DNA of 64,000 nucleotides, from the IMG/VR virus record IMGVR_UViG_3300021962_000021, positions 174,220-238,219 of that record, one strand, 5' to 3'. The notes under the pieces were generated by a model, which made no database searches, was not told the DNA's origin, and saw only the letters and a program-made list of their open reading frames with translations. Every line of letters begins with the position of its first letter. The stretch's first letter is position 1. Of this stretch, positions 18,448 through 45,732 are shown piece after piece. The translations under genes were made by a program, and so were the position numbers.

Positions 18448-18708
18448 ATGACAAATTATAGAATATATAAAGTAAGTAATTTTACTTCTTCTAGTGTTTG
18501 GACTAAATTGGGTAACGAAGCATCTGCAAGTTTGCCTGTAGCTACTGCTTGGGGTATTATGACTCCGGTTGGAATGGCAACATCGGGTAGTGTAACAGTT
18601 GAAGGTGGTGGAGATTTGGTTTTACAATCACTTATTCCTGGTCAAATATATCCATGTTACCCAACGGCTATTAGAGTATCTATGGGAACAGGTTCTGTAT
18701 TATCATAA
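18448..18708 (+). CDS. Small hypothetical protein, possibly virion-associated
   Basis: 86-aa ORF tightly packed in the operon; carries TSSS, SAS, SGS and TGS motifs. Confidence 0.6.
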   Translation: MTNYRIYKVSNFTSSSVWTKLGNEASASLPVATAWGIMTPVGMATSGSVTVEGGGDLVLQSLIPGQIYPCYPTAIRVSMGTGSVLS

Positions 18709-18726
18709 ATTTAAACGGAGAATAAA

Positions 18727-19320
18727 ATGCCAGCAGTAAGTAAAGCACAACAAAGATTTATGGGAATGGTTCACGCCGCACAAAAGGGTGAAGAACCTGC
18801 ATCACCTGAAGTTGCAAAAGTAGCAGCAGATATGGATAAAAAATCTGCTAAAGACTTCGCATCAACATCTCATAAAGGATTGCCTGATAAAAAATCAGAA
18901 CAATTAAATAAAATTAAAGAAATCATTCGTAAGATAGTTAGAGAAAGAATGATTGATGAAATGAATGTTACCGGAAATGTTCAAGGATATAATACACCCA
19001 ATGCATTTTCAAAAGGTGATGATAATAAAAAGAAAGCTAAGAAAGCAGCTGATATGGTGGGTTATAGTGTAGTTAATGAAAACCGTTGGTTAGAATTAAA
19101 AAGAGATGAATCAACTGCACAGGCAAAAATTGGTAGAGGCATATCCAACATCAATAGACAATTAAAAGAAATGGAAAGATTTCTTAATTGGTATGGAAAA
19201 ATTAAAAATGAGAGTGGTGTAGATAACAAAAGTTATTGGAAAAGAACTAATAACAATATTTATGCTATAAAGGAAAGATTAATCAAATTAGACCAAAAAA
19301 TCAGACAAATATCAGAATAA
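18727..19320 (+). CDS. Hypothetical head-core protein (DUF3008-like N-terminal module)
   Basis: MPAVSKAQQRFMGMV...AKDFAST.HKGLP; GGAG SD upstream. Confidence 0.65.
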   Translation: MPAVSKAQQRFMGMVHAAQKGEEPASPEVAKVAADMDKKSAKDFASTSHKGLPDKKSEQLNKIKEIIRKIVRERMIDEMNVTGNVQGYNTPNAFSKGDDNKKKAKKAADMVGYSVVNENRWLELKRDESTAQAKIGRGISNINRQLKEMERFLNWYGKIKNESGVDNKSYWKRTNNNIYAIKERLIKLDQKIRQISE

Positions 19321-19321
19321 G

Positions 19322-19627
19322 ATGAATATAAATCAATTAAAAGAACTTATTAAGCAAGTTGTTAAAGAAGAAAGTGATTACCAACAATTGTTCAAACATA
19401 TGTTGGATAAAACTGGTAAATCTATTCCTGATATGAGTGATGCAGAAAAAGTTAAATTTTTCCAAGCTGTTGATAAAGCAGCAAAAGCAAAATCAGAAGG
19501 TAGATTGACAGGTTTGCCTGAAGAATTGAGTGACAAGCAAAAGCAAATTGATGTTGATAAAGATGGAGAAATAGAAGGTTCGGATTTAGCAGCATTAAGA
19601 GCAAAGAACGAAGAAAAAAAAAAGTAA
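19322..19627 (+). CDS. Small head-region protein with EF-hand-like loop, ending at a slippery A10G site
   Basis: DVDKDGEIEGSD matches a DxDxDG Ca-binding loop; ends GAA AAA AAA AAG TAA. Confidence 0.7.
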   Translation: MNINQLKELIKQVVKEESDYQQLFKHMLDKTGKSIPDMSDAEKVKFFQAVDKAAKAKSEGRLTGLPEELSDKQKQIDVDKDGEIEGSDLAALRAKNEEKKK

Positions 19628-23318: not shown

Positions 23319-24935
23319 ATGGATTTAAAACAAATTATGTCAGGCAAAAACCCACAAAACGTAATGCTTGAGCAAACTAGAGGTTTGAAAGCAAAGTGGG
23401 AAAAAACCGGCTTATTAGAAGGAGTAGGTTCTGAAACTTCTAAGCACGGTATGGCTGTAATGCTTGAAAACCAAGCAAAGCAATTACTTGATGAAGCTAC
23501 TAGAACTGGTACTTCAGCAGGTTCAGAAGAGTGGGCAGGTGTAGCTCTTCCATTGGTAAGAAGAATCTTCGGTAGCATCGCTGCAAAAGAATTCGTTTCT
23601 GTTCAACCAATGAACTTACCTTCAGGTCTTATTTTCTATATGGATTTCAAATACGGTACAGCTACATCGGTAGGTAGACCAGCTTCTGGTTCTTCTATGT
23701 TCGGTAACGGTGGTACATTCGGTAAAGATTCTTTATCTCCAGCAGGTAACAAATTGGGTTCTACTCAAACTACTGAAGGCGGTCTTTACGGAGCAGGTAG
23801 ATTTGGATATACAATCAACGATGTAACTTCTGACGCTTTAACAGCAACAGTAACTACAGCTTCTTGGGCTGATGTTAATTTCGATGCTGATTACTCAGCT
23901 TCAGCAGCTGCAGGTGTTATCAGAAAAGTAAAAATTGGTTTACCATCTGATGCTGATTTCAACGCAGTAAGAGCTTTCTCTTTAACTGGTTCAGTTGACC
24001 AATTACCACAATTTACTTCAATTGATTCTTTAGGTTCTGCATCTTTCTTCGTATCAGCTTCTGTAGCAACAGTAGTACATGGTGCAGGTGGATACGGTAA
24101 TCCAAAAGTAAACTATTCTAAGCAACCAACTGATATCACAAGAGGTGATTTCGAAGATAGAGGTTCTGATTTAGCGATTCCTGAAATCGAATTAGAATTG
24201 AAGTCTGAACCAATCGTTGCTAAGACTAGAAAGTTAAAAGCAATCTGGACTCCAGAATTGGCACAAGACTTAAACGCTTACCATTCAGTAGATGCTGAAG
24301 CTGAATTAACTCAAATGTTATCTGAGTATATTTCTTTGGAAATCGACTTAGAAATCTTAGAGATGTTACAGCAAAACGCATTCACAACTGATTATTGGTC
24401 AGCAAGAGTTGGATACGATTACAATGCAGCAGCAGGTGCATTCCAAATCGACTCTAACGCAGCAGCAGCTTCTGCTTACACAAAGAGCACTTGGTATCAA
24501 ACTTTAGGTATTAAATTACAAAAAGTTTCTAACAAGATTCACCAATTAACTATGAGAGGTGGTGCAAACTTCTTAGTTGTATCTCCAAACGTAGCTACAA
24601 TTTTAGAATCTATGAACGGATTCTCTGCAAACCCAGGTAAAGATGCTTTACAATTTGCAGCAGGTGTTACTAATATCGGTTCAATCTCTAACAGATATGA
24701 TGTTTACAAAAACCCATACATGACTGAGAATGTAATCTTATTAGGTTTCAAAGGTTCTAACTTCTTCGAAACAGGTGCTGTATACGCTCCATATGTTCCG
24801 TTGATTATGACTCCATTGGTTTATGACCCAACTAACTTCACTCCAAGAAGAGGTGTTATGACTAGATACGCTAAGAAAATCGTAAGACCAGAGTTCTACG
24901 GTAAGATTGTCGTTGATGGTTTAAACACTTTATAA
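23319..24935 (+). CDS. gp23: Major capsid protein (T4 gp23-like)
   Basis: MLENQ, SVQPMNLPSGLIF, AKTRKLKA.WT.ELAQDL.A.H..DAEAEL, YAPYVPL, GVMTRY. Confidence 0.97.
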   Translation: MDLKQIMSGKNPQNVMLEQTRGLKAKWEKTGLLEGVGSETSKHGMAVMLENQAKQLLDEATRTGTSAGSEEWAGVALPLVRRIFGSIAAKEFVSVQPMNLPSGLIFYMDFKYGTATSVGRPASGSSMFGNGGTFGKDSLSPAGNKLGSTQTTEGGLYGAGRFGYTINDVTSDALTATVTTASWADVNFDADYSASAAAGVIRKVKIGLPSDADFNAVRAFSLTGSVDQLPQFTSIDSLGSASFFVSASVATVVHGAGGYGNPKVNYSKQPTDITRGDFEDRGSDLAIPEIELELKSEPIVAKTRKLKAIWTPELAQDLNAYHSVDAEAELTQMLSEYISLEIDLEILEMLQQNAFTTDYWSARVGYDYNAAAGAFQIDSNAAAASAYTKSTWYQTLGIKLQKVSNKIHQLTMRGGANFLVVSPNVATILESMNGFSANPGKDALQFAAGVTNIGSISNRYDVYKNPYMTENVILLGFKGSNFFETGAVYAPYVPLIMTPLVYDPTNFTPRRGVMTRYAKKIVRPEFYGKIVVDGLNTL

Positions 24936-25010: not shown

Positions 25011-25044
25011 ATTTAATATGGTAAATTCTCCATATATATGTGTA

Positions 25045-25917
25045 ATGGAAAAGCAAATTATATTTAAAGCGTATGAACTATACGAACATTCTATTGATGA
25101 ATCAAATCGTAGGTCAGATTCATATGTAATGGCAAAACAACCAGATGGTGAATTTGGTTATTTTAATATAAATCAATTTGCTTTAACTGGTTCAAATGTT
25201 TTTGTTGGAAACCAAACTATTACTGGTTCATTTTTAGTAAGTGGTTCAACAACCCAAATTGGTAACAATAGTTTATTAGGTAATACATTTTTAAGTGGTA
25301 ATATTGATGTAAGTGGTTCAACAAATTTCCATAATCATACAATTACAATGACAGGTTCGATGTATACGAGTGGTTCACAAACTATCACTGGTTCATTGGA
25401 TATTAAAGGAAATGTAAATGTAGCAAGTGGCTCTGAATTTTATTTAGCAGGAAACAAATTATTTAATTACGGGCAATTTAGTGATACAACTACACAAAGT
25501 GGTTCGGCAAATACTGCATATGCAAAAAAATTAAATACAATTGATTTTTCACACAATGTTGTAATAGAAAATGGTACAAGAATTAAAGTATTAAATACCG
25601 GAATATATAATTTACAATTTTCATCTCAATTATCAAATACGGCAAACACAAACATTACATTTGATATATGGTTAGCATATACTGGAAGTAATGTTGCAAA
25701 CTCAAATACACAAGTTGATGTAAATAAATCAGCAGGACAATTGGGTCGTTCAGTTGCAGCTTGGAATTTTATGTTACCAATTCAAGCAAATGATTATTTA
25801 GAGTTAATGTGGAGTTGTAATGCAGATACAGGTCAATTGGCATCGATGGGAACTCAAACAAATCCAATAAGACCGGCAATTCCATCGGTTATTGCAACAT
25901 TAACTCAAATAGGCTAA
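25045..25917 (+). CDS. Putative virion structural or decoration protein with TGS/SGS repeats
   Basis: Likely ATG at 25045 (the track starts at 25018); repeated xTGS/xSGS beta units; C-terminal TGIYNLQFSSQL...AAWNF...DYLELMW domain. Confidence 0.6.
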   Translation: MEKQIIFKAYELYEHSIDESNRRSDSYVMAKQPDGEFGYFNINQFALTGSNVFVGNQTITGSFLVSGSTTQIGNNSLLGNTFLSGNIDVSGSTNFHNHTITMTGSMYTSGSQTITGSLDIKGNVNVASGSEFYLAGNKLFNYGQFSDTTTQSGSANTAYAKKLNTIDFSHNVVIENGTRIKVLNTGIYNLQFSSQLSNTANTNITFDIWLAYTGSNVANSNTQVDVNKSAGQLGRSVAAWNFMLPIQANDYLELMWSCNADTGQLASMGTQTNPIRPAIPSVIATLTQIG

Positions 25918-25973: not shown

Positions 25974-27170
25974 ATGTCATATAACAATTATTGGTCACCA
26001 TCCGTTTCAAGTTCATTTATATCTGGTAGTTCAACTCCATTTGGAATTTATGATGGTGATGCTCAATTTAGAAGTGATGCACCAAAAACAGCAACTTGGG
26101 TAGCAAAAAGATTGGGATATCCTATTGTTAATATAGAATTGGATAATGAGCAAATTTGGGCATGTTTTGAAGAAGCAACATCGGAATATTCTGCACAAGT
26201 AAATCAATTCAATTTAAGAAATAACTTAGATATCTTAAAAGGACAACCGAAGACGGCAAGAGATAATTATTCACAAACTCTTGTTGATGGTTCTTTCTTA
26301 CCTACTGTGGTTAGAATGTCACAACAATACGGAACATTAGCAGGTGTAGGCGGAAATACTTCAATCAAAAAAGCATATATAAATTTAACATCATCCGTTC
26401 AAATATACGATTTGATGACAACCGCATTTGATGCATCCACATCACAATCGTTTTCGACATTATTTACAGGAAGTTCTACAATTGATGTAACAAAAGTATT
26501 TCATGAAGCAGTTCCTGCGATTACTCGTTTTTTTGACCCATATTCGGTTGGTGCACAAGGAACTTTAAATTTAATTTCTGAATTAGGATTTGGTAATTAT
26601 TCACCTGCAGCACAATTCTTAATGATGCCTCTTTACGAAGATGTATTGAGAATGCAGCATATTGAATTCAATGACCATATAAGAAAATCGGCACATACAT
26701 TTAATATAGTTGATAATAAATTAGAAATATTTCCTGTTCCAACACAAGATTCTCCTGGAAAAATCTATTTTGAATATATGAGTAGAGATGAGTTTGAACA
26801 TAATTCGCAAACTGTTCAAGCGGATTCACTTTCTGATTATTCGGATGTTCCATATGATTTTATTCAATATTCAAATATAAATGATGTTGGTAAGCAATGG
26901 ATTAGAAAATATACACTAGCGTTATCTAAGGAATTATTAGGAGCAATTAGAGAAAAATATAATTCAGTTCCAATTCCAGATGGTGAAGTTAGTTTAGATG
27001 GTGCAGCATTGAGGTCAGAAGCACAGGTTGAAAAAGATGCGTTAATCACACAATTGAGAGAAAACTTAGAAGAATTGAGTAGAAAGAATGTGATGGAAAA
27101 CAAAGCACATGAAGCAGACCATCAGCAAGAAATGTTAAGAAAAGTTCCATTAAAATTATATGTAGGATAA
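25974..27170 (+). CDS. Neck protein (gp13-like head-tail adaptor)
   Basis: RLGYPIVNIELDNEQI, WIRKYTLALSKELLG.IR.KY, V.LDG..L..EA. Confidence 0.8.
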   Translation: MSYNNYWSPSVSSSFISGSSTPFGIYDGDAQFRSDAPKTATWVAKRLGYPIVNIELDNEQIWACFEEATSEYSAQVNQFNLRNNLDILKGQPKTARDNYSQTLVDGSFLPTVVRMSQQYGTLAGVGGNTSIKKAYINLTSSVQIYDLMTTAFDASTSQSFSTLFTGSSTIDVTKVFHEAVPAITRFFDPYSVGAQGTLNLISELGFGNYSPAAQFLMMPLYEDVLRMQHIEFNDHIRKSAHTFNIVDNKLEIFPVPTQDSPGKIYFEYMSRDEFEHNSQTVQADSLSDYSDVPYDFIQYSNINDVGKQWIRKYTLALSKELLGAIREKYNSVPIPDGEVSLDGAALRSEAQVEKDALITQLRENLEELSRKNVMENKAHEADHQQEMLRKVPLKLYVG

Positions 27171-28769: not shown

Positions 28770-29098
28770 TGAAACGAAGTTTATTAGATATTACTCAAAA
28801 ATTAAGTAGAAAACCTGGAAAAACTGTATTAACCCCATATAATTTAACAGATTCTACTTATTACATTTATGAAGCCAAAGGTTGGAGATTTGTTTCTTTA
28901 TTAAGAGAGATTGAATATAGAAGCACGCAAGATAGCGTGACAGTTTATATAAATACGCTTTCTATAAGTAATGTGGATTTTGTTATAGAACAAACGGCAT
29001 CTGGATTATTATTTAAATTTATAAAAAATAATTTTGAATATCAACTAGATGATGATGATTATATTGAAGTAAAAGGAGATATAGAAAGATATGCTTAA
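28769..29098 (+). CDS. Hypothetical structural-region protein
   Basis: Overlapping start/stop coupling; C-terminal LDDDDYIEVKG resembles the VTSTDEIIITGK end of the upstream gene. Confidence 0.55.
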   Translation: MKRSLLDITQKLSRKPGKTVLTPYNLTDSTYYIYEAKGWRFVSLLREIEYRSTQDSVTVYINTLSISNVDFVIEQTASGLLFKFIKNNFEYQLDDDDYIEVKGDIERYA

Positions 29099-29603
29099 TC
29101 AATTTAATTCAAATACTAGAAAGTTAAATAGAGTAATCAAAAAAATAAATTTAAATAATTTATCTGGTTCTCTAAACGATATTAATCTAAATTTGGATTT
29201 ATCGGGTAGTTTATTGAATATTAAATTACCCACAACTTCATCATATCAATCCAATACAAAATCTAATCCAAATCCAACAAAATTAGTAAATAATAAAAAT
29301 ACTATATCTAATTTTCATAATGAAATTTTAATTCATAGTGCAAGATATGTTAGAATGGGTGTTGATACATTTGATAATACGGCAAACACTTTAACAATAT
29401 ATAATGCACAGACAGATTACGGAACGGAAGGAGCATCGCCTGATAATTTTGAAATAATGGTATATGGTTTACATATTCCTGGAAATTTTAAAGTTGAAGA
29501 TATTGGAAATAATGTTGTGATAACATTGGGAGATAGATATATTGATTTTGATAATGTTACCCTAAGTGATATTTATGTTTTTGGAAAATTAATAAGTATC
29601 TAA
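29091..29603 (+). CDS. Hypothetical structural-region protein
   Basis: Coupled ORF; LSGSL repeats; ends DIYVFGK, similar to its neighbours. Confidence 0.55.
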   Translation: MLNQFNSNTRKLNRVIKKINLNNLSGSLNDINLNLDLSGSLLNIKLPTTSSYQSNTKSNPNPTKLVNNKNTISNFHNEILIHSARYVRMGVDTFDNTANTLTIYNAQTDYGTEGASPDNFEIMVYGLHIPGNFKVEDIGNNVVITLGDRYIDFDNVTLSDIYVFGKLISI

Positions 29604-29619
29604 ATGTTAGATAAAAAGA

Positions 29620-29627
29620 TATTTATA
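29620..29627 (+). promoter_or_regulatory. Putative late promoter motif TATTTATA
   Basis: Exact motif 4 nt before the ATG at 29632. Confidence 0.55.
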
Positions 29628-29631
29628 AAAT

Positions 29632-29955
29632 ATGGCAAACTTAATTAGATTAAAACAAATAGAAAGTGGTTCGCAATTAAATACGGCAGCAAGTGTTGGA
29701 GCAGATTTTAGTGCATCTGTAAATAATATCGTATCACAATCAATTGAAACAACTTTTTCCGCATCAATTGTTCAAATAATTACAAATAATGTAGGAGCAG
29801 TTTTACCTGACGGTGTGGTAAGTGGTTCACAACAAGTAATTGATATATTAATACCTTTAAATCAATTCACAGCATCATTAAACGATACCTACGCAACCGA
29901 TGCAGAATTGGCAACATCACAATCCAATTTGAATGTAGATATGGGTGAATGGTAA
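29632..29955 (+). CDS. Small fibre-associated protein
   Basis: LPDGVVSGSQQV motif shared with the fibre genes; ends DMGEW. Confidence 0.6.
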   Translation: MANLIRLKQIESGSQLNTAASVGADFSASVNNIVSQSIETTFSASIVQIITNNVGAVLPDGVVSGSQQVIDILIPLNQFTASLNDTYATDAELATSQSNLNVDMGEW

Positions 29956-36709: not shown

Positions 36710-39700
36710 ATGGCACTTAAATTTAGACGTGGGACAACCGCACAAAAATCAGGTTCACTAGCATACGGAGAACCATATGTAAATACTACATTAGGGACTC
36801 TACAAATTGGAGGAGAAGCAGGTGATATAACACTTTTAATAAACTCATCCTCAGCTGGAATTTCTGGTTCATCATTGGATATTACAGGAAATGCAAAAAT
36901 AGATGGTAACCTAAGATTGGGTGGTAATATTACAATTGGTGACCAAACAACCGATACTGTTAATGTTGTAGCAAATTTAAGTTCATCTCTTATACCATCT
37001 GTAAATAACGCATTTGATTTAGGTAGTTCTACGAAAATTTGGAGAGACCTTTATTTATCAACAGGTTCAATAAAATTGGTTGATGGAAGTGGTGTGGTTG
37101 TTAATACTATTACAAACGCAAATATTGTAACAACCGATACTATTGCAAGTGGTAGTGTTACTTTAACAAATTCATTACCAACTGGAGTTGTATCAAGTTC
37201 GGCACAAGTTGTAAATATACTGAATTCTCTTAATTCATATACTGCAAGTAATGATACAACCAACTCTACTCAAAATAGTAGATTAGACCAACTTTCTACC
37301 GATAGTGGTTCTCAAAATACAAGAATAACAAATTTAGAAACAAAAGCAACTACACTTCAAACATATACTGCAAGTGTAAATGGGCATATAACCGATATAA
37401 ACACTTATACTTCTTCAAACGATACTACAAATACAACACAAAATACAAGATTAACGGCATTAGAAGCATCAGCATCTACGGCGTTATCTACAAATAATTT
37501 ACAAAGCACAAGAGTTGACCAATTGGCAGCAGCAACTGCATCGGTTAATTCATTTACATCTTCAATCAACACAACTATTAAGAGTAAATTAGATACAGAT
37601 GGTGTTGTGAGTGGTTCATCTCAAATAACTTTATCATCAACAACTGGATTTACTTCTTATAGTTCATCCGTTGATAGTAGAATATTAACTGAAAAAGGTA
37701 GAGTGGATGCAATTTTATTAGCAGCAGATGCGGATAAAGATTCATTTGCAGAAATTGTAACTTTAATCAATTCGGTAGATACTACAAATGATAACACTTT
37801 TGCATCATTTTATACAGCAAGTAATGGTAGATTAAATAATTTAGAATCTACATCAGCAAGTGTAAATGGACATGTTTCTGATATTAATACAAAAACAGGT
37901 TCTTTTGAAACTAAATTTTCAACATTACAAACCTACACTGCAAGTGTAAATGGTCACATCGCAGATATAAATGCATACACTGCATCAAACAATACAACTA
38001 ATAGTTCTCAAACTACAAGAATTGACCAATTAGCAGCAGCAACTGCATCTGTTAATTCATTTACATCTTCAATTGATACAACAATTAAAACTAAATTGAA
38101 TGTAGAAGGTGTAATTAGTGGTTCTTCACAATTAAGTGGAACTACGATATCAAATTTATCAGGTTCATTTACCGGTTCATTCAAAGGAAATGTTGCAGGT
38201 GTTGCTGATTACGCACAAACAACTGCAGTTGTAACAACAGGAGCAACAACGGATAACACCTTATATCCTATATTTTCTTCCAATCCATCACCAAATTCAT
38301 ATATAACACCTATAACTCACCCATCGGGTTCGTTTTATTATAATGGTGCGAGTAGAAAAGTTTATGCTGATACATTTGTAGGTGGAATTGAAGCGACAAA
38401 TGGTATAGTAAGTGGTTCTGCACAAATAGTGGATGTATTATCATCATTGAATTCATATACAAGTTCAAACGATACAACTAATACTTTACAATCTACAAGA
38501 ATTGACCAATTAGCAGCAGCAACTGCATCGGTTAATAGTTTCACATCATCGGAAAATACAAAAGCAGCAACATTAGCTTTATATACCGCATCCGTTGAAA
38601 CTAAATTTTCAACATTGCAAACCTATACTGCAAGTGTAAATGGTCATATTGTGGATATAAATGCATACACTGCATCAAACAATACAACCAACACAACGCA
38701 AAATGGTAGATTAAATAATTTAGAATCTACATCTGCAAGTGTAAATAGTTCAATAAATAATATTAACTCATTCACAGCTAGTAATGGTAATACTTCATTA
38801 AATTCATATACGGGTTCATTAAACGCAGCATTATCAGTAACGGGTTCTAAAATTAACTTTTTAGGAGATATAGTAGTTTGGGGAACACAATCGGTAATCA
38901 GTTCGCAAAATTTGGCAGTAGCTGATAATATGATTTATCTAAATGATGGTTCAACCGTAACTGATCCTGATTTGGGTATAGCAGGTAACTACAATGATGG
39001 TGTATATAGACATACTGGTATATTTAGTGATGCAAGTGATGGACATGCATGGAAAGTGTTTAAGGCATATACTCCTGAACCATCTGGAACAATAGATACT
39101 ACACATGGTTCATTCGCATTGGCAGATTTTAAAGCAGGAGCATTTACAGGTACATCATTTAGTGGACAAATATTGGCAACCAATGGTGTAGTGAGTGGTT
39201 CATCTCAAGTAGATGCAACAGCAACTACTAACTGGTCTACTGGTATTAAAACCCAATTAAATACTAATACCGTTGTATCGGGTTCATCTCAAATAAATTT
39301 AGGTTCCGCAGCAGGAAACATCGCATTATCAACCCAAACAACAGGTGATTATGTTGCAAGTTTAGTTGCAGGAACAAATATTACTCTTTCCAATAATAGT
39401 GGAGAGGGAGCAACCCCAACAATTGGTTTAACAAATAATTCCATTACAATTGCAGGACAATCTACCGCTTTAGGTAGTTCAGTAACGGCAGAAACTATTA
39501 GAACTGCAATAGGAACAGTTGTAACGGGTTCAGGACAAATATCAATTACTGGAGTAAGTGGATATGATGCAAATAAATATGTTGACCACACAACGGTAAC
39601 AATGACTGCCGGAAGTGGTTTAATTGGTGGTGGAACAATCGCAGAAACTAGAACATTCTCAGTTGATTCTGGCTCAATGTTACCATATTACTCTTCTTCT

Positions 39701-40645
39701 GTATTTAGCAGAATTAGTGGTGATTTAGCAATAAACTCAGTTGGTTTTGCAACAATACAACCAAATTCAGTTGCATTGGGTTCGGATACAACGGGTGATT
39801 ATGTTGCAAGTTTAGTTGCAGGAACAAACATTACATTATCAAATAATGCCGGTGAAGGAGCAACTCCTACAATTGGATTGACTAATAACGCAATTACGAT
39901 TGCAGGACAATCTACTTCATTAGGAGGAACTATAACTGCTGAAACTATTAGAACCGCAATTGGCACTGTTGTAACAGGTTCATCACAAATTAATTTCACA
40001 CAATTAAGTGGAATTAGTAATGGTATAATTTCATCTTCTGCACAAATTGATGCATTATTTAATTTGGATGGTATTGTTTCGGGTTCATCTCAAATTGATG
40101 TATCATCTACTACGGGTGATATTGCATTAGGAACTAGAACATCTGGTAACTATGTAGCAACAATAACTGCAGGAACGGGCGTATCAACAACGGGCGCAAC
40201 AACAGGTGAAGGAATTGCACATACAATTTCTATCGGACAATCGGTAGCAACATCGGCATCTCCAACTTTCGCAGGTTTAACAATCAACGGTGCTATCACA
40301 GCAACGGGCGATATTACAGCATATTACTCTTCGGATAAAAGATATAAGAACAATATTCAACCAATTACAGATGCGTTAGCAAAAGTAAGAACATTGAATG
40401 GTGTAACTTGGGAATGGAATGATGATGTGAGTGATGTAACCAAAGCAGCACCTCAAACGGGTTTAATAGCACAAGAAGTTCAAGCGATATTACCTGAAGT
40501 TGTTAAAGAGAAAGAAGATGGATACTTAGGTTTGGATTACGCTAAGATGATGGGTCTAATGGTAGAGGCAATCAAAGAACAACAATTACAAATAGAAAAA
40601 CTACAATTAGAAGTAGTAGATTTAAAAAGACAAAAAGGGTTATAA
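36710..40645 (+). CDS. Second long fibre protein with S74 intramolecular chaperone
   Basis: MALKFRRG...LAYGEP anchor; YSSDKRYKNNI...GLIAQEVQAILPEVV...LDYAKMMGLMVEAIKEQQ. Confidence 0.85.
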   Translation: MALKFRRGTTAQKSGSLAYGEPYVNTTLGTLQIGGEAGDITLLINSSSAGISGSSLDITGNAKIDGNLRLGGNITIGDQTTDTVNVVANLSSSLIPSVNNAFDLGSSTKIWRDLYLSTGSIKLVDGSGVVVNTITNANIVTTDTIASGSVTLTNSLPTGVVSSSAQVVNILNSLNSYTASNDTTNSTQNSRLDQLSTDSGSQNTRITNLETKATTLQTYTASVNGHITDINTYTSSNDTTNTTQNTRLTALEASASTALSTNNLQSTRVDQLAAATASVNSFTSSINTTIKSKLDTDGVVSGSSQITLSSTTGFTSYSSSVDSRILTEKGRVDAILLAADADKDSFAEIVTLINSVDTTNDNTFASFYTASNGRLNNLESTSASVNGHVSDINTKTGSFETKFSTLQTYTASVNGHIADINAYTASNNTTNSSQTTRIDQLAAATASVNSFTSSIDTTIKTKLNVEGVISGSSQLSGTTISNLSGSFTGSFKGNVAGVADYAQTTAVVTTGATTDNTLYPIFSSNPSPNSYITPITHPSGSFYYNGASRKVYADTFVGGIEATNGIVSGSAQIVDVLSSLNSYTSSNDTTNTLQSTRIDQLAAATASVNSFTSSENTKAATLALYTASVETKFSTLQTYTASVNGHIVDINAYTASNNTTNTTQNGRLNNLESTSASVNSSINNINSFTASNGNTSLNSYTGSLNAALSVTGSKINFLGDIVVWGTQSVISSQNLAVADNMIYLNDGSTVTDPDLGIAGNYNDGVYRHTGIFSDASDGHAWKVFKAYTPEPSGTIDTTHGSFALADFKAGAFTGTSFSGQILATNGVVSGSSQVDATATTNWSTGIKTQLNTNTVVSGSSQINLGSAAGNIALSTQTTGDYVASLVAGTNITLSNNSGEGATPTIGLTNNSITIAGQSTALGSSVTAETIRTAIGTVVTGSGQISITGVSGYDANKYVDHTTVTMTAGSGLIGGGTIAETRTFSVDSGSMLPYYSSSVFSRISGDLAINSVGFATIQPNSVALGSDTTGDYVASLVAGTNITLSNNAGEGATPTIGLTNNAITIAGQSTSLGGTITAETIRTAIGTVVTGSSQINFTQLSGISNGIISSSAQIDALFNLDGIVSGSSQIDVSSTTGDIALGTRTSGNYVATITAGTGVSTTGATTGEGIAHTISIGQSVATSASPTFAGLTINGAITATGDITAYYSSDKRYKNNIQPITDALAKVRTLNGVTWEWNDDVSDVTKAAPQTGLIAQEVQAILPEVVKEKEDGYLGLDYAKMMGLMVEAIKEQQLQIEKLQLEVVDLKRQKGL
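39342..39990 (+). repeat. Internal duplication of a ~65-aa module, copies starting near 39342 and 39792
   Basis: TTGDYVASLVAGTNITLSNN.GEGATPTIGLTNN.ITIAGQST.LG...TAETIRTAIGTVVTGS occurs twice. Confidence 0.85.
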
Positions 40646-40649: not shown

Positions 40650-41648
40650 ATGTATGATGTTTATTACACCACCGCTGGAGGCCCTTGGTTCAACAGCGGT
40701 GCTGATATATGGGTAACGAAATGGATAGAAGAAGTGGCACCACATTTAGAGGTTAAACCACTTCTACTTTTCCATAGAAAGAAACCTGATAATTACGAAG
40801 AATTTCCAATCAACATTGACCATATTTGGGAAACAAATGAATTGGAAATTGATAAAATATTAAAGAGTGCAAGAAAAATTCACATACTGCACGGACATTA
40901 TACACCAACTACCGCAATTCATAATAATTTAGATAAAATAGATTCAATTGTTTTCCATAATTTGACAAAAGTATCAATGGTGGGTCAAATGAATAAAGAT
41001 GAATATTTGCATTGGTATGGTAATTGGGAATGGGAAACGGAATTAATAAATAAAATAAAAAATAAAATTTGGGTAGGATTATATAATTTTCCATATAAAA
41101 CGGATAATTTACATCAAATACCAAATTATTATGAATTTATTGAAAACAAAGAACTATTAAATTCTAACAAAATAGGATTTGCAGCAAGAGCAGAAGGTAG
41201 AAAAAATGTAGAATATTTGGATGAATTAGAATCTATTATTTTTACAAATTCAGAAACCTTTAACAAATATTATAGAAAAAAATATGGATACGGATTCGGA
41301 AAATCAAAAATTTATAAATTTGATTACAAACATAAGGAAAGGTTCTACGGACTTGATTGGGGAATATCTCATTCTTGCTTTGAATTTGAACCATTTGGAT
41401 ACGGAATTTTTGAAGCAGTGGATTGGGGAAAGCTTCCGATATTACATGAAAAGTGGCACGTTCCACTTGATTATAAATACAAAGCGACTGACAAGGAATC
41501 ATTTAAGCAGACCTACCAAACGATTTGTGAGGATGATTACGAAACCCGTAAAAAAGAATTTGAAAAACTTAAAAGTTGGATGATACAACACTTTTCAAAT
41601 AAAGAAGTGTGGAAAGAAAAACTTTTAGATATTTATAATGGATTATAA
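40650..41648 (+). CDS. Glycosyltransferase (GT-B fold, GT4-like)
   Basis: SGADIW N-terminal loop, FAARAEGRKN, EPFGYGIFEAVDWGKLPI (E-x7-E signature). Confidence 0.75.
   Translation: MYDVYYTTAGGPWFNSGADIWVTKWIEEVAPHLEVKPLLLFHRKKPDNYEEFPINIDHIWETNELEIDKILKSARKIHILHGHYTPTTAIHNNLDKIDSIVFHNLTKVSMVGQMNKDEYLHWYGNWEWETELINKIKNKIWVGLYNFPYKTDNLHQIPNYYEFIENKELLNSNKIGFAARAEGRKNVEYLDELESIIFTNSETFNKYYRKKYGYGFGKSKIYKFDYKHKERFYGLDWGISHSCFEFEPFGYGIFEAVDWGKLPILHEKWHVPLDYKYKATDKESFKQTYQTICEDDYETRKKEFEKLKSWMIQHFSNKEVWKEKLLDIYNGL
41630..41637 (+). promoter_or_regulatory. Putative late promoter motif TATTTATA
   Basis: Exact motif in the 3' end of the glycosyltransferase gene, before 41659. Confidence 0.5.
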
Positions 41649-41658
41649 TCATTAATAG

Positions 41659-43419
41659 ATGGCAAGAACAAACTTATCATTAGGTAACTTATATAGAGCA
41701 GTGAGTGGTTCGGCTAGACCGGGAGCAGTTTCATTAGGTGGACTTGCTGGTGGTAGTGCGGGTAGTAATGTAAATTTACTATCTTTTGCAACAAATGAAA
41801 TAACGGTGACTCCACCAACTTATACTTATATAGTAGAAAGTACAACGGAAAATGCACAATTTTCATTTACACAAACCGGTTCTTATTTTTACAATAAAGT
41901 TCAACAACAATTAGCAAACTTTACTTGTTCATTTAATAACGCAAATTTCTCAACAGGTTCAAATACATTCGGAACAGGTCCAACGATAGTTCCAATTACT
42001 CCTGCAGGTATAAATCAATCATCATACTCGGAGGCTTCAGCTGTTTTAACAATGAAGTATCAAGATGGTTATAATATAAATGCAGCTAATTATGGAACTG
42101 TAACAACCAAAACTTTATATGCGGTTGATGTCTATAATACGATTAACCAACCTGATTTCTGTTTGTTATTTGGAACCAAAGTAACAAAAGCAAACGGAAC
42201 GGAAGTTAATGTTGAAGATTTATCTGTTGGTGATACAATTAAAGCATGGGTTCCTATGGGATTACCTGATGAATCATTACCAACGGAAACGGAAGAAGTT
42301 GAATGGAGATTTCATATGTTAGAAACAGCAACGGGTTCATATGAAGAAGTGGTGATATCTGATATTGTATTTAACTTTGCAAGTGGATATTATCAAATTA
42401 ACGATGGATTAATAAAAGCAACAGGAACTCACCCAATTTATGTTTGGGATGCTGAAATTGAAAAATATAGATTTAAAAATATGGAAGATGTTCTACCTGG
42501 AGATTTGGTAGTAACATTTGATGAGATATCAGGATTGACAGAGGTGGAAGTTTATGATATTGATACTATAATAGAAGATGTTGAAATTGTAACAATTAAT
42601 GTTGAAAACGCCGATGTTTATTTGGCAAATAAAACAATTTCTCATAATAAAGGAACAATTACTCAACCATTTATTCCATCATCTGGATTAAGAATGTATA
42701 TGGACCCATCAAAAGCATATTCATTCCCATCACAAACACTTCCATCAACAGGCACACCAACAACGGATTGGTTAGATTTGAGTGGATATAATACCGGTGT
42801 AAGACCTTCTGGAGTTGCAAACTCGGCAGGATATAGTGGAACTTCACCAGCATATAATGCCGGAGCAACTAGAATTGATAAATATTTTACATTGGATGGT
42901 AGTGGAACTTTTTGGTTTAAAGATAGAAACTCAAATATCAATGGTGGTATTACTCAATTTGATGTTACGGCGATGACATTTGTTGCATGGGTTAGACAAA
43001 CTGCAAACCAAGGTGCAACTTATGGTGGATTGTTCTCAAAAGAAGGTGCGGATAGAGATTACAATTTTTATTTATATAGTAGTGGTGCATCTGCATGGGA
43101 TGGTTTCCATTTTGCAACTGCAAGAGGAACGGTTTCAAATTCAGTTCAAACATTTTCTGCACCAGCATTGAATACATGGCATATGGTGGCAGTTACAATA
43201 TCAGCAGCAGCTGGTATAACATATTATTTAAATGGTAGTAGTGTAGGAACGGGCACAGTTTCGGCATTTAACGCAACATCTACTTATGATATTAAATTGG
43301 GTAGAGCTGATAATTATGCAAAATGTCAATTAGGACCTACTTTATTTTATAATAGAGTATTATCCGCAAGTGAGATTTCACAAGTATACAATTATTTCCA
43401 ACCAACATATAGACCGTAA
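41659..43419 (+). CDS. Virion-associated protein with central Hint (intein-like) domain and C-terminal LamG/ConA-like domain
   Basis: CLLFGTKV...VEDLSVGD...ATGTHP...ISHN Hint motifs; T..AWV...WHMVAVT...YLNG...YNRVLSASEI LamG motifs. Confidence 0.8.
   Translation: MARTNLSLGNLYRAVSGSARPGAVSLGGLAGGSAGSNVNLLSFATNEITVTPPTYTYIVESTTENAQFSFTQTGSYFYNKVQQQLANFTCSFNNANFSTGSNTFGTGPTIVPITPAGINQSSYSEASAVLTMKYQDGYNINAANYGTVTTKTLYAVDVYNTINQPDFCLLFGTKVTKANGTEVNVEDLSVGDTIKAWVPMGLPDESLPTETEEVEWRFHMLETATGSYEEVVISDIVFNFASGYYQINDGLIKATGTHPIYVWDAEIEKYRFKNMEDVLPGDLVVTFDEISGLTEVEVYDIDTIIEDVEIVTINVENADVYLANKTISHNKGTITQPFIPSSGLRMYMDPSKAYSFPSQTLPSTGTPTTDWLDLSGYNTGVRPSGVANSAGYSGTSPAYNAGATRIDKYFTLDGSGTFWFKDRNSNINGGITQFDVTAMTFVAWVRQTANQGATYGGLFSKEGADRDYNFYLYSSGASAWDGFHFATARGTVSNSVQTFSAPALNTWHMVAVTISAAAGITYYLNGSSVGTGTVSAFNATSTYDIKLGRADNYAKCQLGPTLFYNRVLSASEISQVYNYFQPTYRP
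42160..42648 (+). other. Hint domain (163 aa, no endonuclease), BIL-like
   Basis: Cys1 at 42160, block B TGTH, terminal His-Asn at 42643-42648 followed by Lys. Confidence 0.8.
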
Positions 43420-43443
43420 TTGTTGTTTTGAAATAAAAAATTA

Positions 43444-43451
43444 TATTTATA
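43444..43451 (+). promoter_or_regulatory. Putative late promoter motif TATTTATA
   Basis: Exact motif before the sheath gene. Confidence 0.65.
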
Positions 43452-43488
43452 TTGAGAATTATAAATTTTTAAAAATTAATTATATAAA

Positions 43489-45732
43489 ATGGCAGAGAAA
43501 TTAGTATCACCAGGCGTATTTACTAAAGAAAACGACCTTTCGTTCTTACAACAAGGTATTGCTGATATTGGTGCAGCATTCATCGGACCTTTCAAAGAAG
43601 GACCATTAGTTCCGACAATTGTAAACTCACAAGCTGAATTCCAAACTCTTTTTGGAGCAGCTGATGACACATATTATACACCATTAGCGGTTCAAAACTA
43701 TTTAAGAGAAGCGGGGGTTGCAACTATTTGTAGAACTGCAGGAGTTGATGGATATACAGGATATAATCCATTATTGATAACTATTACATCTGGTTCATCT
43801 GGACAAACTACAGGTTTAGTATCATCATCAGTAGCGATACTTTTCCCAACTGATAAAAATACTTTAACAAGTGGTTTAAGTGGTTCGGCAGCAACAACAG
43901 CTGGAAATAATAATTTAGGAAGTGGTAATATCATTATGTTTGTAACGGGTTCGAGTAATTTTACAGGAACTGCATCAGTTGATTATAGCAACACAAACGA
44001 TGTTGAATCTGTATTTGGAACAAATCCATTGGGTGCAAAGGGTGGATATGTATACGGATTTTTTAAAAACCACGGAATTGCATTTGGTGCAACTGTATCA
44101 TCTTCGGTTTCTGTTTTAGATGACCAAGATTTTACATTTGAAGCACAAGAAGCTTTAACACCAATGATTGTATCACAATTAATAAGTGGTGAAAGACATA
44201 ACCTTTTCCAATTTGAAACAATCGGTGCAGGTAATGCAGCAAATACAAAAATAAAAGTAGGTATTTCAAATATAAAAGCAGCTGGTTCGGTAAACGGAAC
44301 AGATTACGGAACATTCACAGTAACTATTAGAGATTTCGCAGATACTAATAAGAAAAAGACAGTATTAGAAACATTTGCAAATGTAAATTTAGACCCTAAC
44401 TCTCCAAATTTTATTAGTAGAGTAATCGGTGATAGAAAAAGAACAATTGCATCAAGTGGAAAAGTAACAGAAACAGGTGATTGGGTAAACAATTCAAAAT
44501 ATGTTAGAATTGCAAATCTAAATACAGTATCTCCTATTCAAGCAGTTCCATTCGGACATGCTAAATACAAATTACCAGTTGTAGCAGGAGCATATAATAA
44601 TTTAATACCAACTGCATCATTTGTAACATCATCAGCAACACAGTTTGGTGGTATTGATTTGGATAACAATACTGATAATAAAATTTATTTAAAACCAATT
44701 CCAGCAGGAGCAGGTAATGGTTCAAACGCAATCTTTGGTTTGGATTCAGCTGCAACAAACGGAGTAGCATTGGCAGTAGGTTCAACTTCAGCACAATATA
44801 TCGTAGCATTCCAAGAAGGATTTGATGGATATTCACCAGCAACTGCAGCAGCGGATGTTGTTGACCCAGCATCTACTGAAGGTATTGCATCTTATGGTAA
44901 GCATATCGCAGCATTATCTAACGCTGACGAATATGATATCAATATGGTAGTAGCACCACACGTAAACAGAAGATTACATTCATCTGTATTTACTTCAATA
45001 CTTGATATGGTTGAAGGAAGAGCAGACGCATTCTTCATCGCAGAAGCAGGTGATTCAGCAACAACTTTAGCACAAACTGTAACACAAGCAGGTGAAGTAG
45101 ATACTAACTACGCAGCATTCTACTATCCATATATCAAAACAATTGATACAAACACAAACAAACTTATCACAGTTCCACCATCAGTATTATTACCAGGTGT
45201 ATTCGCAGCAAACGATAGAGTAGCAGCTGAATGGTTCGCACCAGCAGGTTTAAATAGAGGTGGTTTAGTAGGAGCAGTAAGTGTATTAGATAAAGTAACT
45301 CAATCAGAAAGAGATACATTATATGAAGGTAAAGTAAACCCAATCTGCCAGTTCCCTGGACAAGGTATCGTAGTATGGGGTCAAAAAACTTTACAAGATA
45401 AACCATCAGCATTAGATAGAATCAATGTAAGAAGATTATTATTGACTGTTAGAAAGTATATCGCTTCAACTTCAAAATATTTAGTATTCGAACAAAACTC
45501 TTCTGAAACAAGAAATAGATTCTTAAATATTGTTAATCCTTATTTAGAATCAATCCAACAAAGACAAGGTCTTTACGCTTTCAGAGTGGTAATGGATGAA
45601 ACAAACAACACACCGGATGTAATTGATAGAAACATTTTAAAAGGAGCTATCTACTTACAACCAACTAAGACAGCTGAATTCATTCAAATTGATTTCAATA
45701 TCTTACCAACTGGTGCAAGTTTTAACGGATAA
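43489..45732 (+). CDS. gp18: Tail sheath protein (gp18-like)
   Basis: SPGVFTKEND, WFAPAGLNRG, WGQKTL...ALDRINVRRL, FEQN, PTKTAEFI. Confidence 0.95.
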   Translation: MAEKLVSPGVFTKENDLSFLQQGIADIGAAFIGPFKEGPLVPTIVNSQAEFQTLFGAADDTYYTPLAVQNYLREAGVATICRTAGVDGYTGYNPLLITITSGSSGQTTGLVSSSVAILFPTDKNTLTSGLSGSAATTAGNNNLGSGNIIMFVTGSSNFTGTASVDYSNTNDVESVFGTNPLGAKGGYVYGFFKNHGIAFGATVSSSVSVLDDQDFTFEAQEALTPMIVSQLISGERHNLFQFETIGAGNAANTKIKVGISNIKAAGSVNGTDYGTFTVTIRDFADTNKKKTVLETFANVNLDPNSPNFISRVIGDRKRTIASSGKVTETGDWVNNSKYVRIANLNTVSPIQAVPFGHAKYKLPVVAGAYNNLIPTASFVTSSATQFGGIDLDNNTDNKIYLKPIPAGAGNGSNAIFGLDSAATNGVALAVGSTSAQYIVAFQEGFDGYSPATAAADVVDPASTEGIASYGKHIAALSNADEYDINMVVAPHVNRRLHSSVFTSILDMVEGRADAFFIAEAGDSATTLAQTVTQAGEVDTNYAAFYYPYIKTIDTNTNKLITVPPSVLLPGVFAANDRVAAEWFAPAGLNRGGLVGAVSVLDKVTQSERDTLYEGKVNPICQFPGQGIVVWGQKTLQDKPSALDRINVRRLLLTVRKYIASTSKYLVFEQNSSETRNRFLNIVNPYLESIQQRQGLYAFRVVMDETNNTPDVIDRNILKGAIYLQPTKTAEFIQIDFNILPTGASFNG

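What the first reader, a model, noticed from the sequence alone, without database searches (positions are those of the whole stretch)
18448..45732. Virion-wide (S/T)-(G/A/S)-S motif: a possible glycosylation sequon for a glycan-coated particle
SGS, TGS, SAS, TAS and SSS tripeptides saturate the fibres and the 25045 gene. They also cluster in variable parts of the major capsid (ASGSS, YSASA, LTGSV, GSASFFVSAS), neck (VSSSFISGSS, FTGSS) and sheath (TSGSS, LSGSA, VTGSS, GTAS). They are scarce in portal, terminase, protease and replication proteins. A GT-B enzyme sits inside the fibre cluster and an NDP-sugar cluster is nearby. Inference: a phage-encoded system that O-glycosylates exposed virion surfaces.
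Basis: inference. Interest (0 to 1): 0.72.

Follow-up and report, generated by a model that had tools for sequence, protein, structure and literature searches.

The report
Serine-small-serine motif on phage virion
The outer virion proteins of this 238-kb freshwater T4-like phage really are packed with a sharply defined Ser/Thr-Gly/Ala-Ser motif, but sequence cannot show that it is a sugar-attachment site, and the nearby glycosyltransferase is not tied to it.

Summary
The motif is [ST]-[GA]-S, usually flanked by hydrophobic residues. It is about 5-fold enriched over local-composition shuffles in 12 virion proteins (171 observed, 34 expected). With both hydrophobic flanks required, enrichment is about 13-fold. 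The other 288 proteins sit at expectation (74 vs 74), so there is no depletion.

Order matters. SGS, TGS, TAS and SAS are enriched, but SGT, TGT, AGS, NGS and SGN are not. The signal is at the protein level (77 different 9-mers at 209 sites). It is specific to this lineage: T4, RM378 and a cyanophage lack it.

The supporting genes are also real. Gene 40650-41648 has a GT-B fold with an EX7E motif, and NDP-sugar genes and a second glycosyltransferase cluster exist.

However, that GT-B belongs to a two-gene cassette with the next tail gene (together in 21/21 loci, jointly absent in 11/11). Relatives without the cassette keep the motif, in one case at the highest enrichment seen. In the one protein modelled, the motif lies at strand-to-turn junctions of near-invariant repeats.

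My best reading (about 0.5) is a structural corner or capping motif of outward-facing fibre and add-on domains. An O-glycosylation sequon served by other conserved glycosyltransferases stays open (about 0.25) and needs glycoproteomics.

The parts
18448..18708 (+). 86-aa motif-rich ORF in the prohead-core gene block (5 [ST][GAS]S)
   Evidence: No family hit. Its position between portal and protease suggests it may be internal, which fits an 'exposed surface' rule poorly.
23319..24935 (+). Major capsid protein (gp23-like). Six motifs, all within residues 123-248, the variable region
   Evidence: phrog_138. T4 gp23 structures align only outside or weakly over this region. Sites 123, 180 and 193 are kept as a class (SAS/TAS/SGS/TGS) in 74-98% of 82 homologues.
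25018..25917 (+). Short trimeric-fibre-like protein (likely start 25045) with a beta-repeat stalk carrying 8-9 TGS/SGS and a TNF/C1q/BclA-like head
   Evidence: G and S of the motifs invariant or nearly so; repeat units gained and lost among homologues. (AF2: [ST] is the last strand residue and G-S forms the turn; stalk pLDDT only about 50-55). (Foldseek hits to BclA, C1q and TNF-family heads).
25974..27170 (+). Neck / head-tail adaptor (gp13-like), 4 motifs
   Evidence: phrog_211..
29091..29955 (+). Two small motif-rich ORFs (170 aa and 107 aa) ahead of the fibres
30039..32072 (+). Fibre with segmented coiled coil (DUF7310). 26 motifs, mostly at segment boundaries (YTAS, YTSS, TDSGS)
32189..32707 (+). 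172-aa fibre N-terminal-like protein, 5 TGS/SGS
   Evidence: phrog_17885..
32739..36653 (+). Long fibre, 1304 aa: coiled-coil region, GVVSGSSQI-type repeats, C-terminal Peptidase_S74 chaperone. 58 motifs
   Evidence: Coiled-coil part aligns with reovirus sigma-1 and P22 gp26.
36710..40645 (+). Second long fibre, 1311 aa, same architecture. 47 motifs
40650..41648 (+). GT-B fold glycosyltransferase (GT4-like, EX7E motif), no motifs of its own. First gene of a two-gene cassette
   Evidence: No Pfam, PHROG or NCBIfam hit. AF2 pLDDT 86. Foldseek to GT4 enzymes, T4 AGT, GtfC and SPY. E247-x7-E255 conserved. Synteny.
41659..43419 (+). 586-aa virion/tail protein with LamG-like C-terminus. Second gene of the cassette
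   Evidence: phrog_8510 and phrog_38766. Laminin_G_3 (weak) on homologues. Co-occurs with the GT in 21/21 loci and is co-absent in 11/11. Complex score 0.47 against best control 0.00, verdict 'weak support'.
43489..45732 (+). Tail sheath. 8 motifs, all in the N-terminal/middle part outside the conserved gp18-like C-terminal core
   Evidence: Sites 161, 380 and 464 are class-conserved in 63-72% of 76 homologues, including clades without the GT.
3390..7644 (+). NDP-sugar modification genes: two SDR epimerase/dehydratase/reductase genes (best hits GDP-fucose-synthase-like, below cut-off), an SGNH-like gene and a transketolase-like fragment
   Evidence: The upstream 475-aa ORF 1993-3420 has only a weak lead to GT10 fucosyltransferases.

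Best explanation
[ST]-[GA]-S, typically in the form hydrophobic-[ST]-[GA]-S-hydrophobic, is a genuine, selected, protein-level signature. It marks the outward-facing modules of this phage lineage: trimeric fibre shafts, beta-repeat stalks, baseplate-periphery proteins, and the lineage-specific add-on domains of capsid, neck and sheath.

**Most likely mechanism (inferred): structural.**
- The first hydroxyl residue ends a strand, or sits at a core-flanking position of a coiled-coil segment.
- The small Gly/Ala permits a tight two-residue corner or close packing.
- The invariant third Ser caps the corner.
- This gives a compact polar junction that can recur every 6-13 residues in stalks and at each segment boundary in the segmented coiled coils.
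- The motif spreads by duplication of repeat units and is kept by purifying selection.

**The glycosyltransferase.** The motif does not depend on the GT-B in the fibre cluster. That enzyme is part of a two-gene cassette with the adjacent LamG-like tail protein and most likely acts on or with that protein.

**Shown:** the enrichment, its specificity, its conservation, its lineage distribution, the GT fold, and the cassette linkage.

**Inferred:** the corner/capping role, and the target of the GT.
For: - **Order-specific enrichment survives local shuffles**.
- **Flanks.** Hydrophobic residues at -4, -1 and +1 after the motif.
- **Protein-level signal.** 77 different 9-mers at 209 sites, and Ser codon usage matches background.
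- **Repeat context.** In the 25018 family the G and S of the motifs are invariant or nearly so, and they sit inside repeat units that are gained and lost as blocks.
- **Model.** AF2 places [ST] as the last strand residue and G-S in the turn at 8 of 10 sites.
- **Structural precedent (weak).** A profile match (E about 0.09) to a lactococcal phage baseplate protein aligns the stalk start to a TGD...G..TF fibre element. TGD is also enriched 2.7x.
- **Module association.** In relatives' giant fibres the motif is confined to particular shaft modules and is absent from homologous fibres that lack them.
- **Independence from the GT cassette.** Strict motif density is 4.6 per 1000 aa (0.5 expected) with the cassette and 2.9 (0.38 expected) without it. 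L104 has no GT and shows the highest ratio, 18.8x.
- **GT tied to its neighbour**.
Against: - **The specificity is sharper than generic turn propensity predicts.** Asn, Asp or Gly at position 3 are not enriched, and Thr is accepted at position 1 but not at position 3.
- **The same triplet appears in unrelated folds:** coiled coil, beta repeats, MCP insertion region, sheath outer region.
- **Outgroups lack it.** Homologous virion proteins of T4, RM378, LR756511 and a Synechococcus phage show no enrichment.
- **Class conservation.** Sites in MCP and sheath keep the motif class while individual residues change, for example SAS/TAS/SGS. An enzyme recognition site would behave this way.
- **Model quality.** The stalk part of the AF2 model is low confidence (pLDDT about 50-55, modelled as a monomer).
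- **Untested.** No trimer model or solvent accessibility could be computed.
Confidence: 0.5

Rival explanations
1. The motif is an O-glycosylation sequon. Cytoplasmic phage glycosyltransferases recognise [ST]-[GA]-S presented at exposed corners and coat the outer virion with glycans. The likely enzymes are the conserved GT4-like pair and the GT2 / Glyco_trans_1_2 enzymes of the genome's 19-28 kb sugar cluster, rather than the fibre-cluster GT. They would be supplied by phage NDP-sugar genes.
For: - **Motif shape.** Sharp, directional three-residue specificity, with the third Ser most conserved.
- **Distribution.** Present on unrelated outer proteins, and at expectation in the rest of the proteome. 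Among virion-module proteins, portal and scaffold have none, the hub and a 1228-aa unannotated protein downstream of it have none (3.2 expected for the last), and the tube has one against 0.24 expected.
- **Location.** In variable regions of MCP and sheath that lie outside the conserved cores.
- **Enzyme capacity.** At least six GT-like genes plus sugar-nucleotide genes in the genome.
- **Lineage match.** The GT4-like pair is conserved at 46-52% identity in exactly the cultured relatives that also show enriched sheath, neck and MCP (immuto, Mel-JY01). The second GT of the pair is absent from RM378 and LR756511 and gives only a marginal hit (E 5.9e-4) in LR756508; these lack MCP enrichment.
- **Precedents (my own knowledge).** SRRP S-A-S repeats glycosylated by GT4-type GtfA/B; BclA with a C1q-like head on an O-glycosylated repeat stalk; AIDA-I beta-helix heptosylation; mycobacteriophage capsid and tail-tube glycosylation (cited in PMC12619734).
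Against: - No direct evidence of any glycan.
- The only GT in the structural operon is uncoupled from the motif.
- The lineage-level GT correlation is a single clade, with no independent contrasts.
- Hydrophobic flanks and near-invariance inside folded repeats suit a structural role.
- The first residue would be buried if it occupies a coiled-coil core position.
- There is no depletion of the motif from non-virion phage proteins (74 vs 73.7).
- The 86-aa motif-rich ORF lies among prohead-core genes.
- Phage GT clusters may instead modify DNA or host envelope glycans.
Confidence: 0.25
2. The motif serves a non-glycan surface function or a different modification. Examples: arrays of paired hydroxyls that bind host polysaccharide or organise water on fibre surfaces (analogous to T-x-T faces of beta-helical proteins), or a site for phosphorylation, acylation or another Ser modification.
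For: - Paired hydroxyls separated by a small residue, outward-facing if in a strand.
- Restricted to outer virion proteins.
- An SGNH/GDSL-like gene lies among the sugar genes.
Against: - No candidate enzyme or binding partner was identified.
- T is excluded at position 3, unlike T-x-T ice- or glycan-binding faces.
- Purely speculative.
Confidence: 0.1
3. The pattern is an artefact of Ser/Thr/Gly/Ala-rich composition and of internal repeat duplication in fibres, with no independent selection on the triplet.
For: - Fibres are S/T/G/A-rich and highly repetitive; YTASVNGHI.DIN and GVVSGSSQI units recur.
- One genome protein (55247-56662) is fully explained by local composition.
- Collagen-like G-S/T-S/T runs inflate SGS counts in relatives.
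Against: - Enrichment persists in 15-aa block shuffles.
- It persists after collapsing similar 15-mers: 162 of 207 contexts are non-redundant.
- It is present in non-repetitive MCP, sheath and neck proteins.
- Permuted orders of the same residue classes are much less enriched.
- Neighbouring tripeptides such as SGT, GGS and AGS are at or below expectation.
Confidence: 0.03

Closest known systems
Mycobacteriophage virion glycosylation (Freeman et al. 2023, as cited in PMC12619734)
   Same: Phage-encoded glycosyltransferases and Ser/Thr-bearing capsid and tail proteins. The proposed role is a glycan coat on the particle.
   Different: There the glycans were observed, and they sit on C-terminal extensions of capsid and tail-tube subunits. 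Here nothing has been observed. The candidate sites are internal, dispersed triplets with hydrophobic flanks, and the tail tube is not enriched.
Serine-rich-repeat adhesin glycosylation by GtfA/GtfB/GtfC (GT-B, GT4-like; my own knowledge)
   Same: S-A-S / S-x-S type triplets as cytoplasmic O-glycosylation targets of GT-B enzymes. GtfC (9htx) is among the Foldseek matches of the window's GT.
   Different: SRRP repeats are long, disordered, low-complexity tracts. Here the triplets are embedded in folded repeats. The structural match to GtfC is no better than to dozens of other GT4 enzymes.
BclA exosporium fibre (collagen-like stalk plus C1q-like head)
   Same: The 25018 protein has a TNF/C1q/BclA-like C-terminal head on a repeat stalk rich in Ser/Thr-Gly. 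BclA's stalk is O-glycosylated (my own knowledge).
   Different: The stalk here is not G-X-Y collagen. It is built of hexad-like beta repeats (TGSxxx/SGSxxx). No sequence homology to BclA was shown.
Segmented trimeric coiled-coil fibres (T4 fibritin, reovirus sigma-1 tail, P22 gp26) and S74-chaperone tail fibres
   Same: The coiled-coil part of fibre 32739-36653 matches sigma-1 and gp26. Both long fibres end in Peptidase_S74 intramolecular chaperone domains.
   Different: T4 fibritin and the T4 long and short fibres show no [ST][GAS]S enrichment. The regular triplet at segment boundaries is specific to this lineage.
GT4-family retaining glycosyltransferases (WaaG, PimA, MshA, BshA) and T4 alpha-glucosyltransferase
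   Same: Two-Rossmann GT-B fold (TM 0.55-0.71) and an E-x7-E motif in the C-terminal domain.
   Different: About 10-14% identity and no Pfam, NCBIfam or PHROG model match. It is encoded in the late structural operon, as a cassette with a tail protein. Donor and acceptor are unknown.

Membership tests
GT-B fold, GT4-like retaining glycosyltransferase (gene 40650-41648) | Two Rossmann-like domains with an inter-domain cleft | tested here: met
   AF2 model with pLDDT 85.8 and pTM 0.84. Foldseek probability 1.0 and TM 0.55-0.71 to many GT4 structures.
GT-B fold, GT4-like retaining glycosyltransferase (gene 40650-41648) | E-x7-E motif in the C-terminal domain | tested here: met
   E247 is invariant and E255 at least 90% conserved in 31 homologues (EPFGYGIFE).
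GT-B fold, GT4-like retaining glycosyltransferase (gene 40650-41648) | Match to a curated sequence model (Pfam Glycos_transf_1 and relatives) | tested here: not met
   No Pfam, PHROG or NCBIfam family at the thresholds used. The PDB profile search found nothing relevant.
GT-B fold, GT4-like retaining glycosyltransferase (gene 40650-41648) | Sugar-nucleotide-dependent transferase activity on a defined acceptor | not testable with these tools
   Needs enzyme assays.
Protein O-glycosylation sequon | Motif enriched beyond composition on target proteins | tested here: met
Protein O-glycosylation sequon | Motif residues solvent-exposed on the assembled particle | tested here: inconclusive
   Sites lie in MCP and sheath regions outside the conserved cores and at turns in a low-confidence model. 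No accessibility could be computed, and hydrophobic flanks suggest partial burial.
Protein O-glycosylation sequon | Phylogenetic co-occurrence of motif and transferase | tested here: not met
   This applies to the fibre-cluster GT. Two of three independent GT losses keep full enrichment. The other GTs vary too little within the lineage to test.
Protein O-glycosylation sequon | Glycan mass detected on motif peptides | not testable with these tools
   Needs virion glycoproteomics.
Tail fibres with C-terminal intramolecular chaperone (Peptidase_S74) | S74 domain at the C-terminus | tested here: met
   PF13884 at E 1e-17 and 5e-19 for 32739-36653 and 36710-40645. PDB matches 8jov and 6f45.
T4-like (gp23/gp20/gp18) myovirus structural module | gp23-like MCP, gp20-like portal, S77 prohead protease, gp18-like sheath, gp19-like tube | tested here: met

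The most novel reading that the evidence does not exclude
A T4-like jumbo phage lineage of fresh waters uses its own multi-enzyme sugar machinery to O-glycosylate a short, directional sequon ([ST]-[GA]-S displayed at hydrophobically anchored corners). The sequon occurs on capsid, neck, sheath, baseplate periphery and all fibres. This would be the first sequon-directed, particle-wide glycan coat in a tailed phage. A separate GT-plus-tail-protein cassette would add a second, protein-specific modification.
Probability: 0.2. Interest if true: 0.85.

Novelty: new variant of a known kind. Interest (0 to 1): 0.5.

Why it matters
- **If glycosylated.** Phage particles in lakes could carry programmable glycan coats that affect adsorption, aggregation, grazing and recognition. 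A three-residue sequon would make such coats predictable from sequence across thousands of metagenomic phages.
- **If structural.** The motif is a compact, reusable corner or capping element. It marks surface modules of fibres and add-on domains, which is useful for annotating the many unassignable virion proteins of this abundant lineage and for fibre engineering.
- **Either way.**
  - The strict GT-plus-tail-protein cassette is a concrete, testable case of a glycosyltransferase embedded in tail morphogenesis.
  - The cultured relative Flavobacterium phage immuto offers an experimental entry point.

Tried and rejected
- **Depletion outside the virion.** I expected the motif to be depleted in non-virion proteins. 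It is not: 75 observed against 83.6 expected, and 74 against 73.7.
- **DNA-level cause.** Rejected. There are 77 different 9-mers. The only codon skew (GGT over GGA) is explained by genome-wide GATC avoidance.
- **Generic property of T4-like fibres.** Rejected using T4, RM378, LR756511 and a Synechococcus phage.
- **Raw GT-versus-motif association.** Mann-Whitney p = 0.004 looked supportive. The tree showed only three state changes, with two contrary contrasts. Part of the signal in clades without the GT came from collagen-like runs, so I recounted with the strict flanked motif.
- **'Relatives without any GT'.** This could not be established. Immuto and Mel-JY01 have other GTs. The near-complete contig G001 lacks detectable GT2, Glyco_trans_1_2 and A1-family GTs, but its ends fall where the reference genome has its GT cluster, so absence is unproven.
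- **PDB sequence searches.** No solved homologue was found for the motif-bearing stalk or shaft regions.
- **Small phages carrying the C1q-like head.** Limnohabitans phage DC33 has the head but no stalk, so it was uninformative.
- **Freeman et al. 2023.** The paper could not be read. Literature searches found no description of this motif.


Full report
**Context.**
- The window is the last 64 kb of a 238,219-bp, single-contig phage genome (31% G+C, CheckV 100%) in which nearly all genes are on one strand.
- It encodes a T4-type morphogenetic module:

| Coordinates | Product |
|---|---|
| 13025-14635 | terminase |
| 15792-17528 | gp20-like portal |
| 20035-20625 | S77 prohead protease |
| 23319-24935 | gp23-like major capsid protein (MCP) |
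| 25974-27170 | gp13-like neck protein |
| 30039-32072, 32739-36653, 36710-40645 | three fibres; the last two end in Peptidase_S74 chaperone domains |
| 43489-45732 | sheath |
| 45780-46268 | tube |
| 46366-47181 | baseplate hub |

- The closest named relatives by MCP are Microcystis phage Mel-JY01 (55%), Flavobacterium phage immuto (51%) and Rhodothermus phage RM378 (40%). Hundreds of metagenomic contigs are 77-95% identical.

- Against whole-protein shuffles, [ST][GAS]S is enriched at z = 6-10 in the fibres and the 25018 protein. It is enriched at p of about 0.003-0.05 in MCP, neck and sheath.
- Enrichment survives shuffling within 15-, 30- and 60-residue blocks, so local composition does not explain it. 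The one exception is a low-complexity protein elsewhere in the genome.
- Genome-wide, 12 proteins hold 171 [ST][GA]S against 34.4 expected. The other 288 hold 74 against 73.7. The 'scarcity' in portal, terminase and replication proteins is therefore expectation, not avoidance.
- The rich set extends outside the given interval. It includes proteins immediately after a gp6-like baseplate wedge gene (genome 136788-148921) and a 1693-aa protein.

**The motif is sharper than described.**
- With a 20-residue block-shuffle null, SGS is 5.1x, TGS 4.0x, TAS 4.2x and SAS 2.6x. TSS is 1.8x and SSS 1.3x.
- Every other X-G-S, S-G-X, T-G-X or [ST][GA]T is at most about 1.5x, apart from TGD at 2.7x.
- The motif is directional. 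Thr is accepted first but not third, and Asn, Asp or Gly are not accepted third.
- Hydrophobic residues flank it at -1 (56%) and just after it (54%), against 31% background, and also at -4.
- The five-residue form, hydrophobic-[ST]-[GA]-S-hydrophobic, occurs 46 times against 3.4 expected in the rich set.
- 77 different nucleotide 9-mers encode 209 sites, and Ser codons match background. The one skew, GGT over GGA, follows from extreme GATC avoidance (33 observed, 720 expected). Selection therefore acts on the protein.

**Conservation and distribution.**
- In 82 MCP homologues, sites 123, 180 and 193 keep the motif class in 74%, 98% and 93% of sequences. Meanwhile residues interchange: site 180 reads SAS 44, TAS 21, SGS 14. 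These sites lie in the least conserved part of the protein.
- Sheath sites 161, 380 and 464 behave the same way in 76 homologues. The third Ser is the most constant residue.
- All MCP sites lie in residues 123-248. T4 gp23 aligns with this stretch only weakly, or across an extra insertion of about 60 residues.
- All sheath sites lie outside the conserved gp18-like C-terminal core. By homology these are the outer parts; this is an inference.
- T4 virion proteins (gp23, gp18, gp12, wac, gp34-37 and others) show no enrichment. Neither do the MCP and sheath regions of RM378, LR756511 and a Synechococcus phage.
- Immuto and Mel-JY01 show enrichment in sheath, neck and some other proteins. The trait is therefore lineage-specific.

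**Structural context.**
- The 25018 family has more than 3000 homologues. In it, TGS/SGS sit in repeat units (TGSxxxSGSxx...) that are inserted and deleted as blocks. Their G and S are invariant or nearly so.
- An AF2 model has a confident C-terminal jelly roll matching BclA, C1q and TNF-family heads. Its beta-repeat stalk is low confidence (pLDDT about 50-55).
- In that stalk, 8 of 10 motifs have [ST] as the last strand residue with G-S in the following two-residue turn.
- In the fibres, the motif recurs at the boundaries of short coiled-coil segments that match reovirus sigma-1 and P22 gp26.
- A weak profile match aligns the stalk start with a TGD...G..TF element of a lactococcal phage baseplate protein.
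- In relatives' giant fibres the motif is confined to particular shaft modules. Some counts are inflated by collagen-like G-S/T-S/T runs.

**The glycosyltransferase and sugar genes.**
- Gene 40650-41648 matches no sequence family. It folds confidently as a GT-B enzyme, resembles many GT4 enzymes as well as T4 AGT, GtfC and SPY, and carries a conserved E-x7-E motif.
- The window's 3390-7644 region holds two SDR sugar-nucleotide enzymes and accessory genes.
- The genome has a further cluster at about 19-28 kb. It contains two GT4-like enzymes, an SDR enzyme, a GT2, a Glyco_trans_1_2 and a HAD-nucleotidyltransferase fusion. Another GT2 lies at 52.5 kb.
- The GT4-like pair is conserved at 46-52% identity in immuto and Mel-JY01.

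**Co-occurrence test.**
- I fetched 80 sheath-centred loci from viral contigs. In 21 of the 32 loci with at least 4 kb upstream of the sheath (the window included), a homologue of the GT sits about 2.7-3.5 kb upstream of the sheath, directly after an S74 fibre.
- Fibre motif ratios are higher in GT-positive loci (median 4.1 vs 2.1, p = 0.004). However, the sheath tree requires only three changes of GT state.
  - One change separates an eight-member GT-negative clade, which has lower ratios, from its GT-positive sister clade.
  - The other two changes are recent losses, L104 and L124. Both keep 4-5x core enrichment.
- With the strict flanked motif, L104 has the highest ratio of all (18.8x). Pooled densities are 4.6 per 1000 aa (0.5 expected) with the GT and 2.9 (0.38 expected) without it.
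- L104 lies in a 176-kb, 92%-complete contig with no homologue of this GT anywhere.
- The GT co-occurs with the next gene (41659-43419, a LamG-like virion protein) in 21/21 loci. Both are absent in 11/11.
- A complex prediction scored 0.47 against a best control of 0.00. The tool grades this as weak support: the mark was reached by 58 of 80 solved complexes and 2 of 110 mismatches, but a score of 0.60 or under was seen in only 7 of those 80 and in both mismatches that passed. Contacts involve residues 59-64, 189-190 and 235-240 of the tail protein.
- The fibre-cluster GT is thus a cassette partner of that protein, not the keeper of the virion-wide motif.

**Interpretation.**
- I rate a structural corner/capping role as most likely (about 0.5). 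The supporting points are the flanks, the repeat context, the near-invariance, the module association and the independence from the cassette.
- I keep a glycosylation sequon at about 0.25.
  - The specificity is sharper than turn propensity explains.
  - The same triplet marks unrelated outer proteins of one lineage.
  - Sites are conserved as a class.
  - The lineage carries a conserved set of other GTs.
- Another surface function or modification gets about 0.1. A composition or repeat artefact is essentially excluded.

**Limits.**
- Gene calls outside the window are simple longest-ORF calls.
- The stalk model is low confidence and monomeric.
- Exposure is inferred from homology, not computed.
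- Absence of GTs in fragmentary contigs is not proof.
- The lineage-level association with the GT4-like pair has no independent contrasts.

Noticed in passing
whole genome (window included): Extreme avoidance of short palindromes: GATC 33 observed vs 720 expected (0.05), GTAC 0.13, CGCG 0.27, CTAG 0.38, ACGT 0.40, CATG 0.42. This suggests heavy restriction pressure on unprotected DNA. It also explains why Gly in the motif is GGT rather than GGA before TCN serine codons.
   Followed up: partly
window 40650-43419: The GT-B gene and the following 586-aa LamG-like tail protein form a strict two-gene cassette: 21/21 present together and 11/11 absent together, across three independent changes on the sheath tree. 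A predicted complex scores 0.47 against a best control of 0.00, graded 'weak support'. The cassette is not conserved beside the 36%-identical GT of LR756508.
   Followed up: yes
window 25018-25917: Gene directly after the MCP. It encodes a short fibre-like protein with a beta-repeat stalk of variable repeat number and a TNF/C1q/BclA-like head. It has more than 3000 homologues, and some small freshwater phages carry the head alone. The likely true start is 25045.
   Followed up: partly
genome 19400-28100 (locus L088 5420-14104): Second sugar cluster outside the window: two GT4-like enzymes, an SDR epimerase/dehydratase, a GT2, a Glyco_trans_1_2 and a HAD-sugar-nucleotidyltransferase fusion. The GT4-like pair is conserved in Flavobacterium phage immuto and Microcystis phage Mel-JY01. 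Its target (DNA, host envelope or virion) is unknown.
   Followed up: partly
L141 294-8684 and similar giant fibres (L138, L145, L154): Relatives' 2200-2800-aa fibres contain hundreds of residues of collagen-like G-S/T-S/T triplets (GTSGTSGSSGS...). These inflate simple SGS counts and must be masked in any motif survey.
   Followed up: partly
window 18448-18708: An 86-aa ORF with 5 motifs lies between the portal and the prohead protease, where T4 has internal prohead-core genes. If it is an internal protein, it is an exception to an 'exposed surface' rule. It has no family match.
   Followed up: no
window 7798-11682: A 1294-aa protein whose N-terminus matches cytidylyltransferase-like nucleotidyltransferases. 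The immuto counterpart is annotated as NadR-type NMN adenylyltransferase. It is therefore probably NAD-related rather than part of a CMP-sugar pathway.
   Followed up: no
window 1993-3420: A 475-aa ORF upstream of the SDR genes has only a weak language-model lead (score 0.79) to GT10 fucosyltransferases. The adjacent SDR enzymes score best, though below cut-off, against GDP-L-fucose synthase. This hints at a 6-deoxyhexose pathway.
   Followed up: partly
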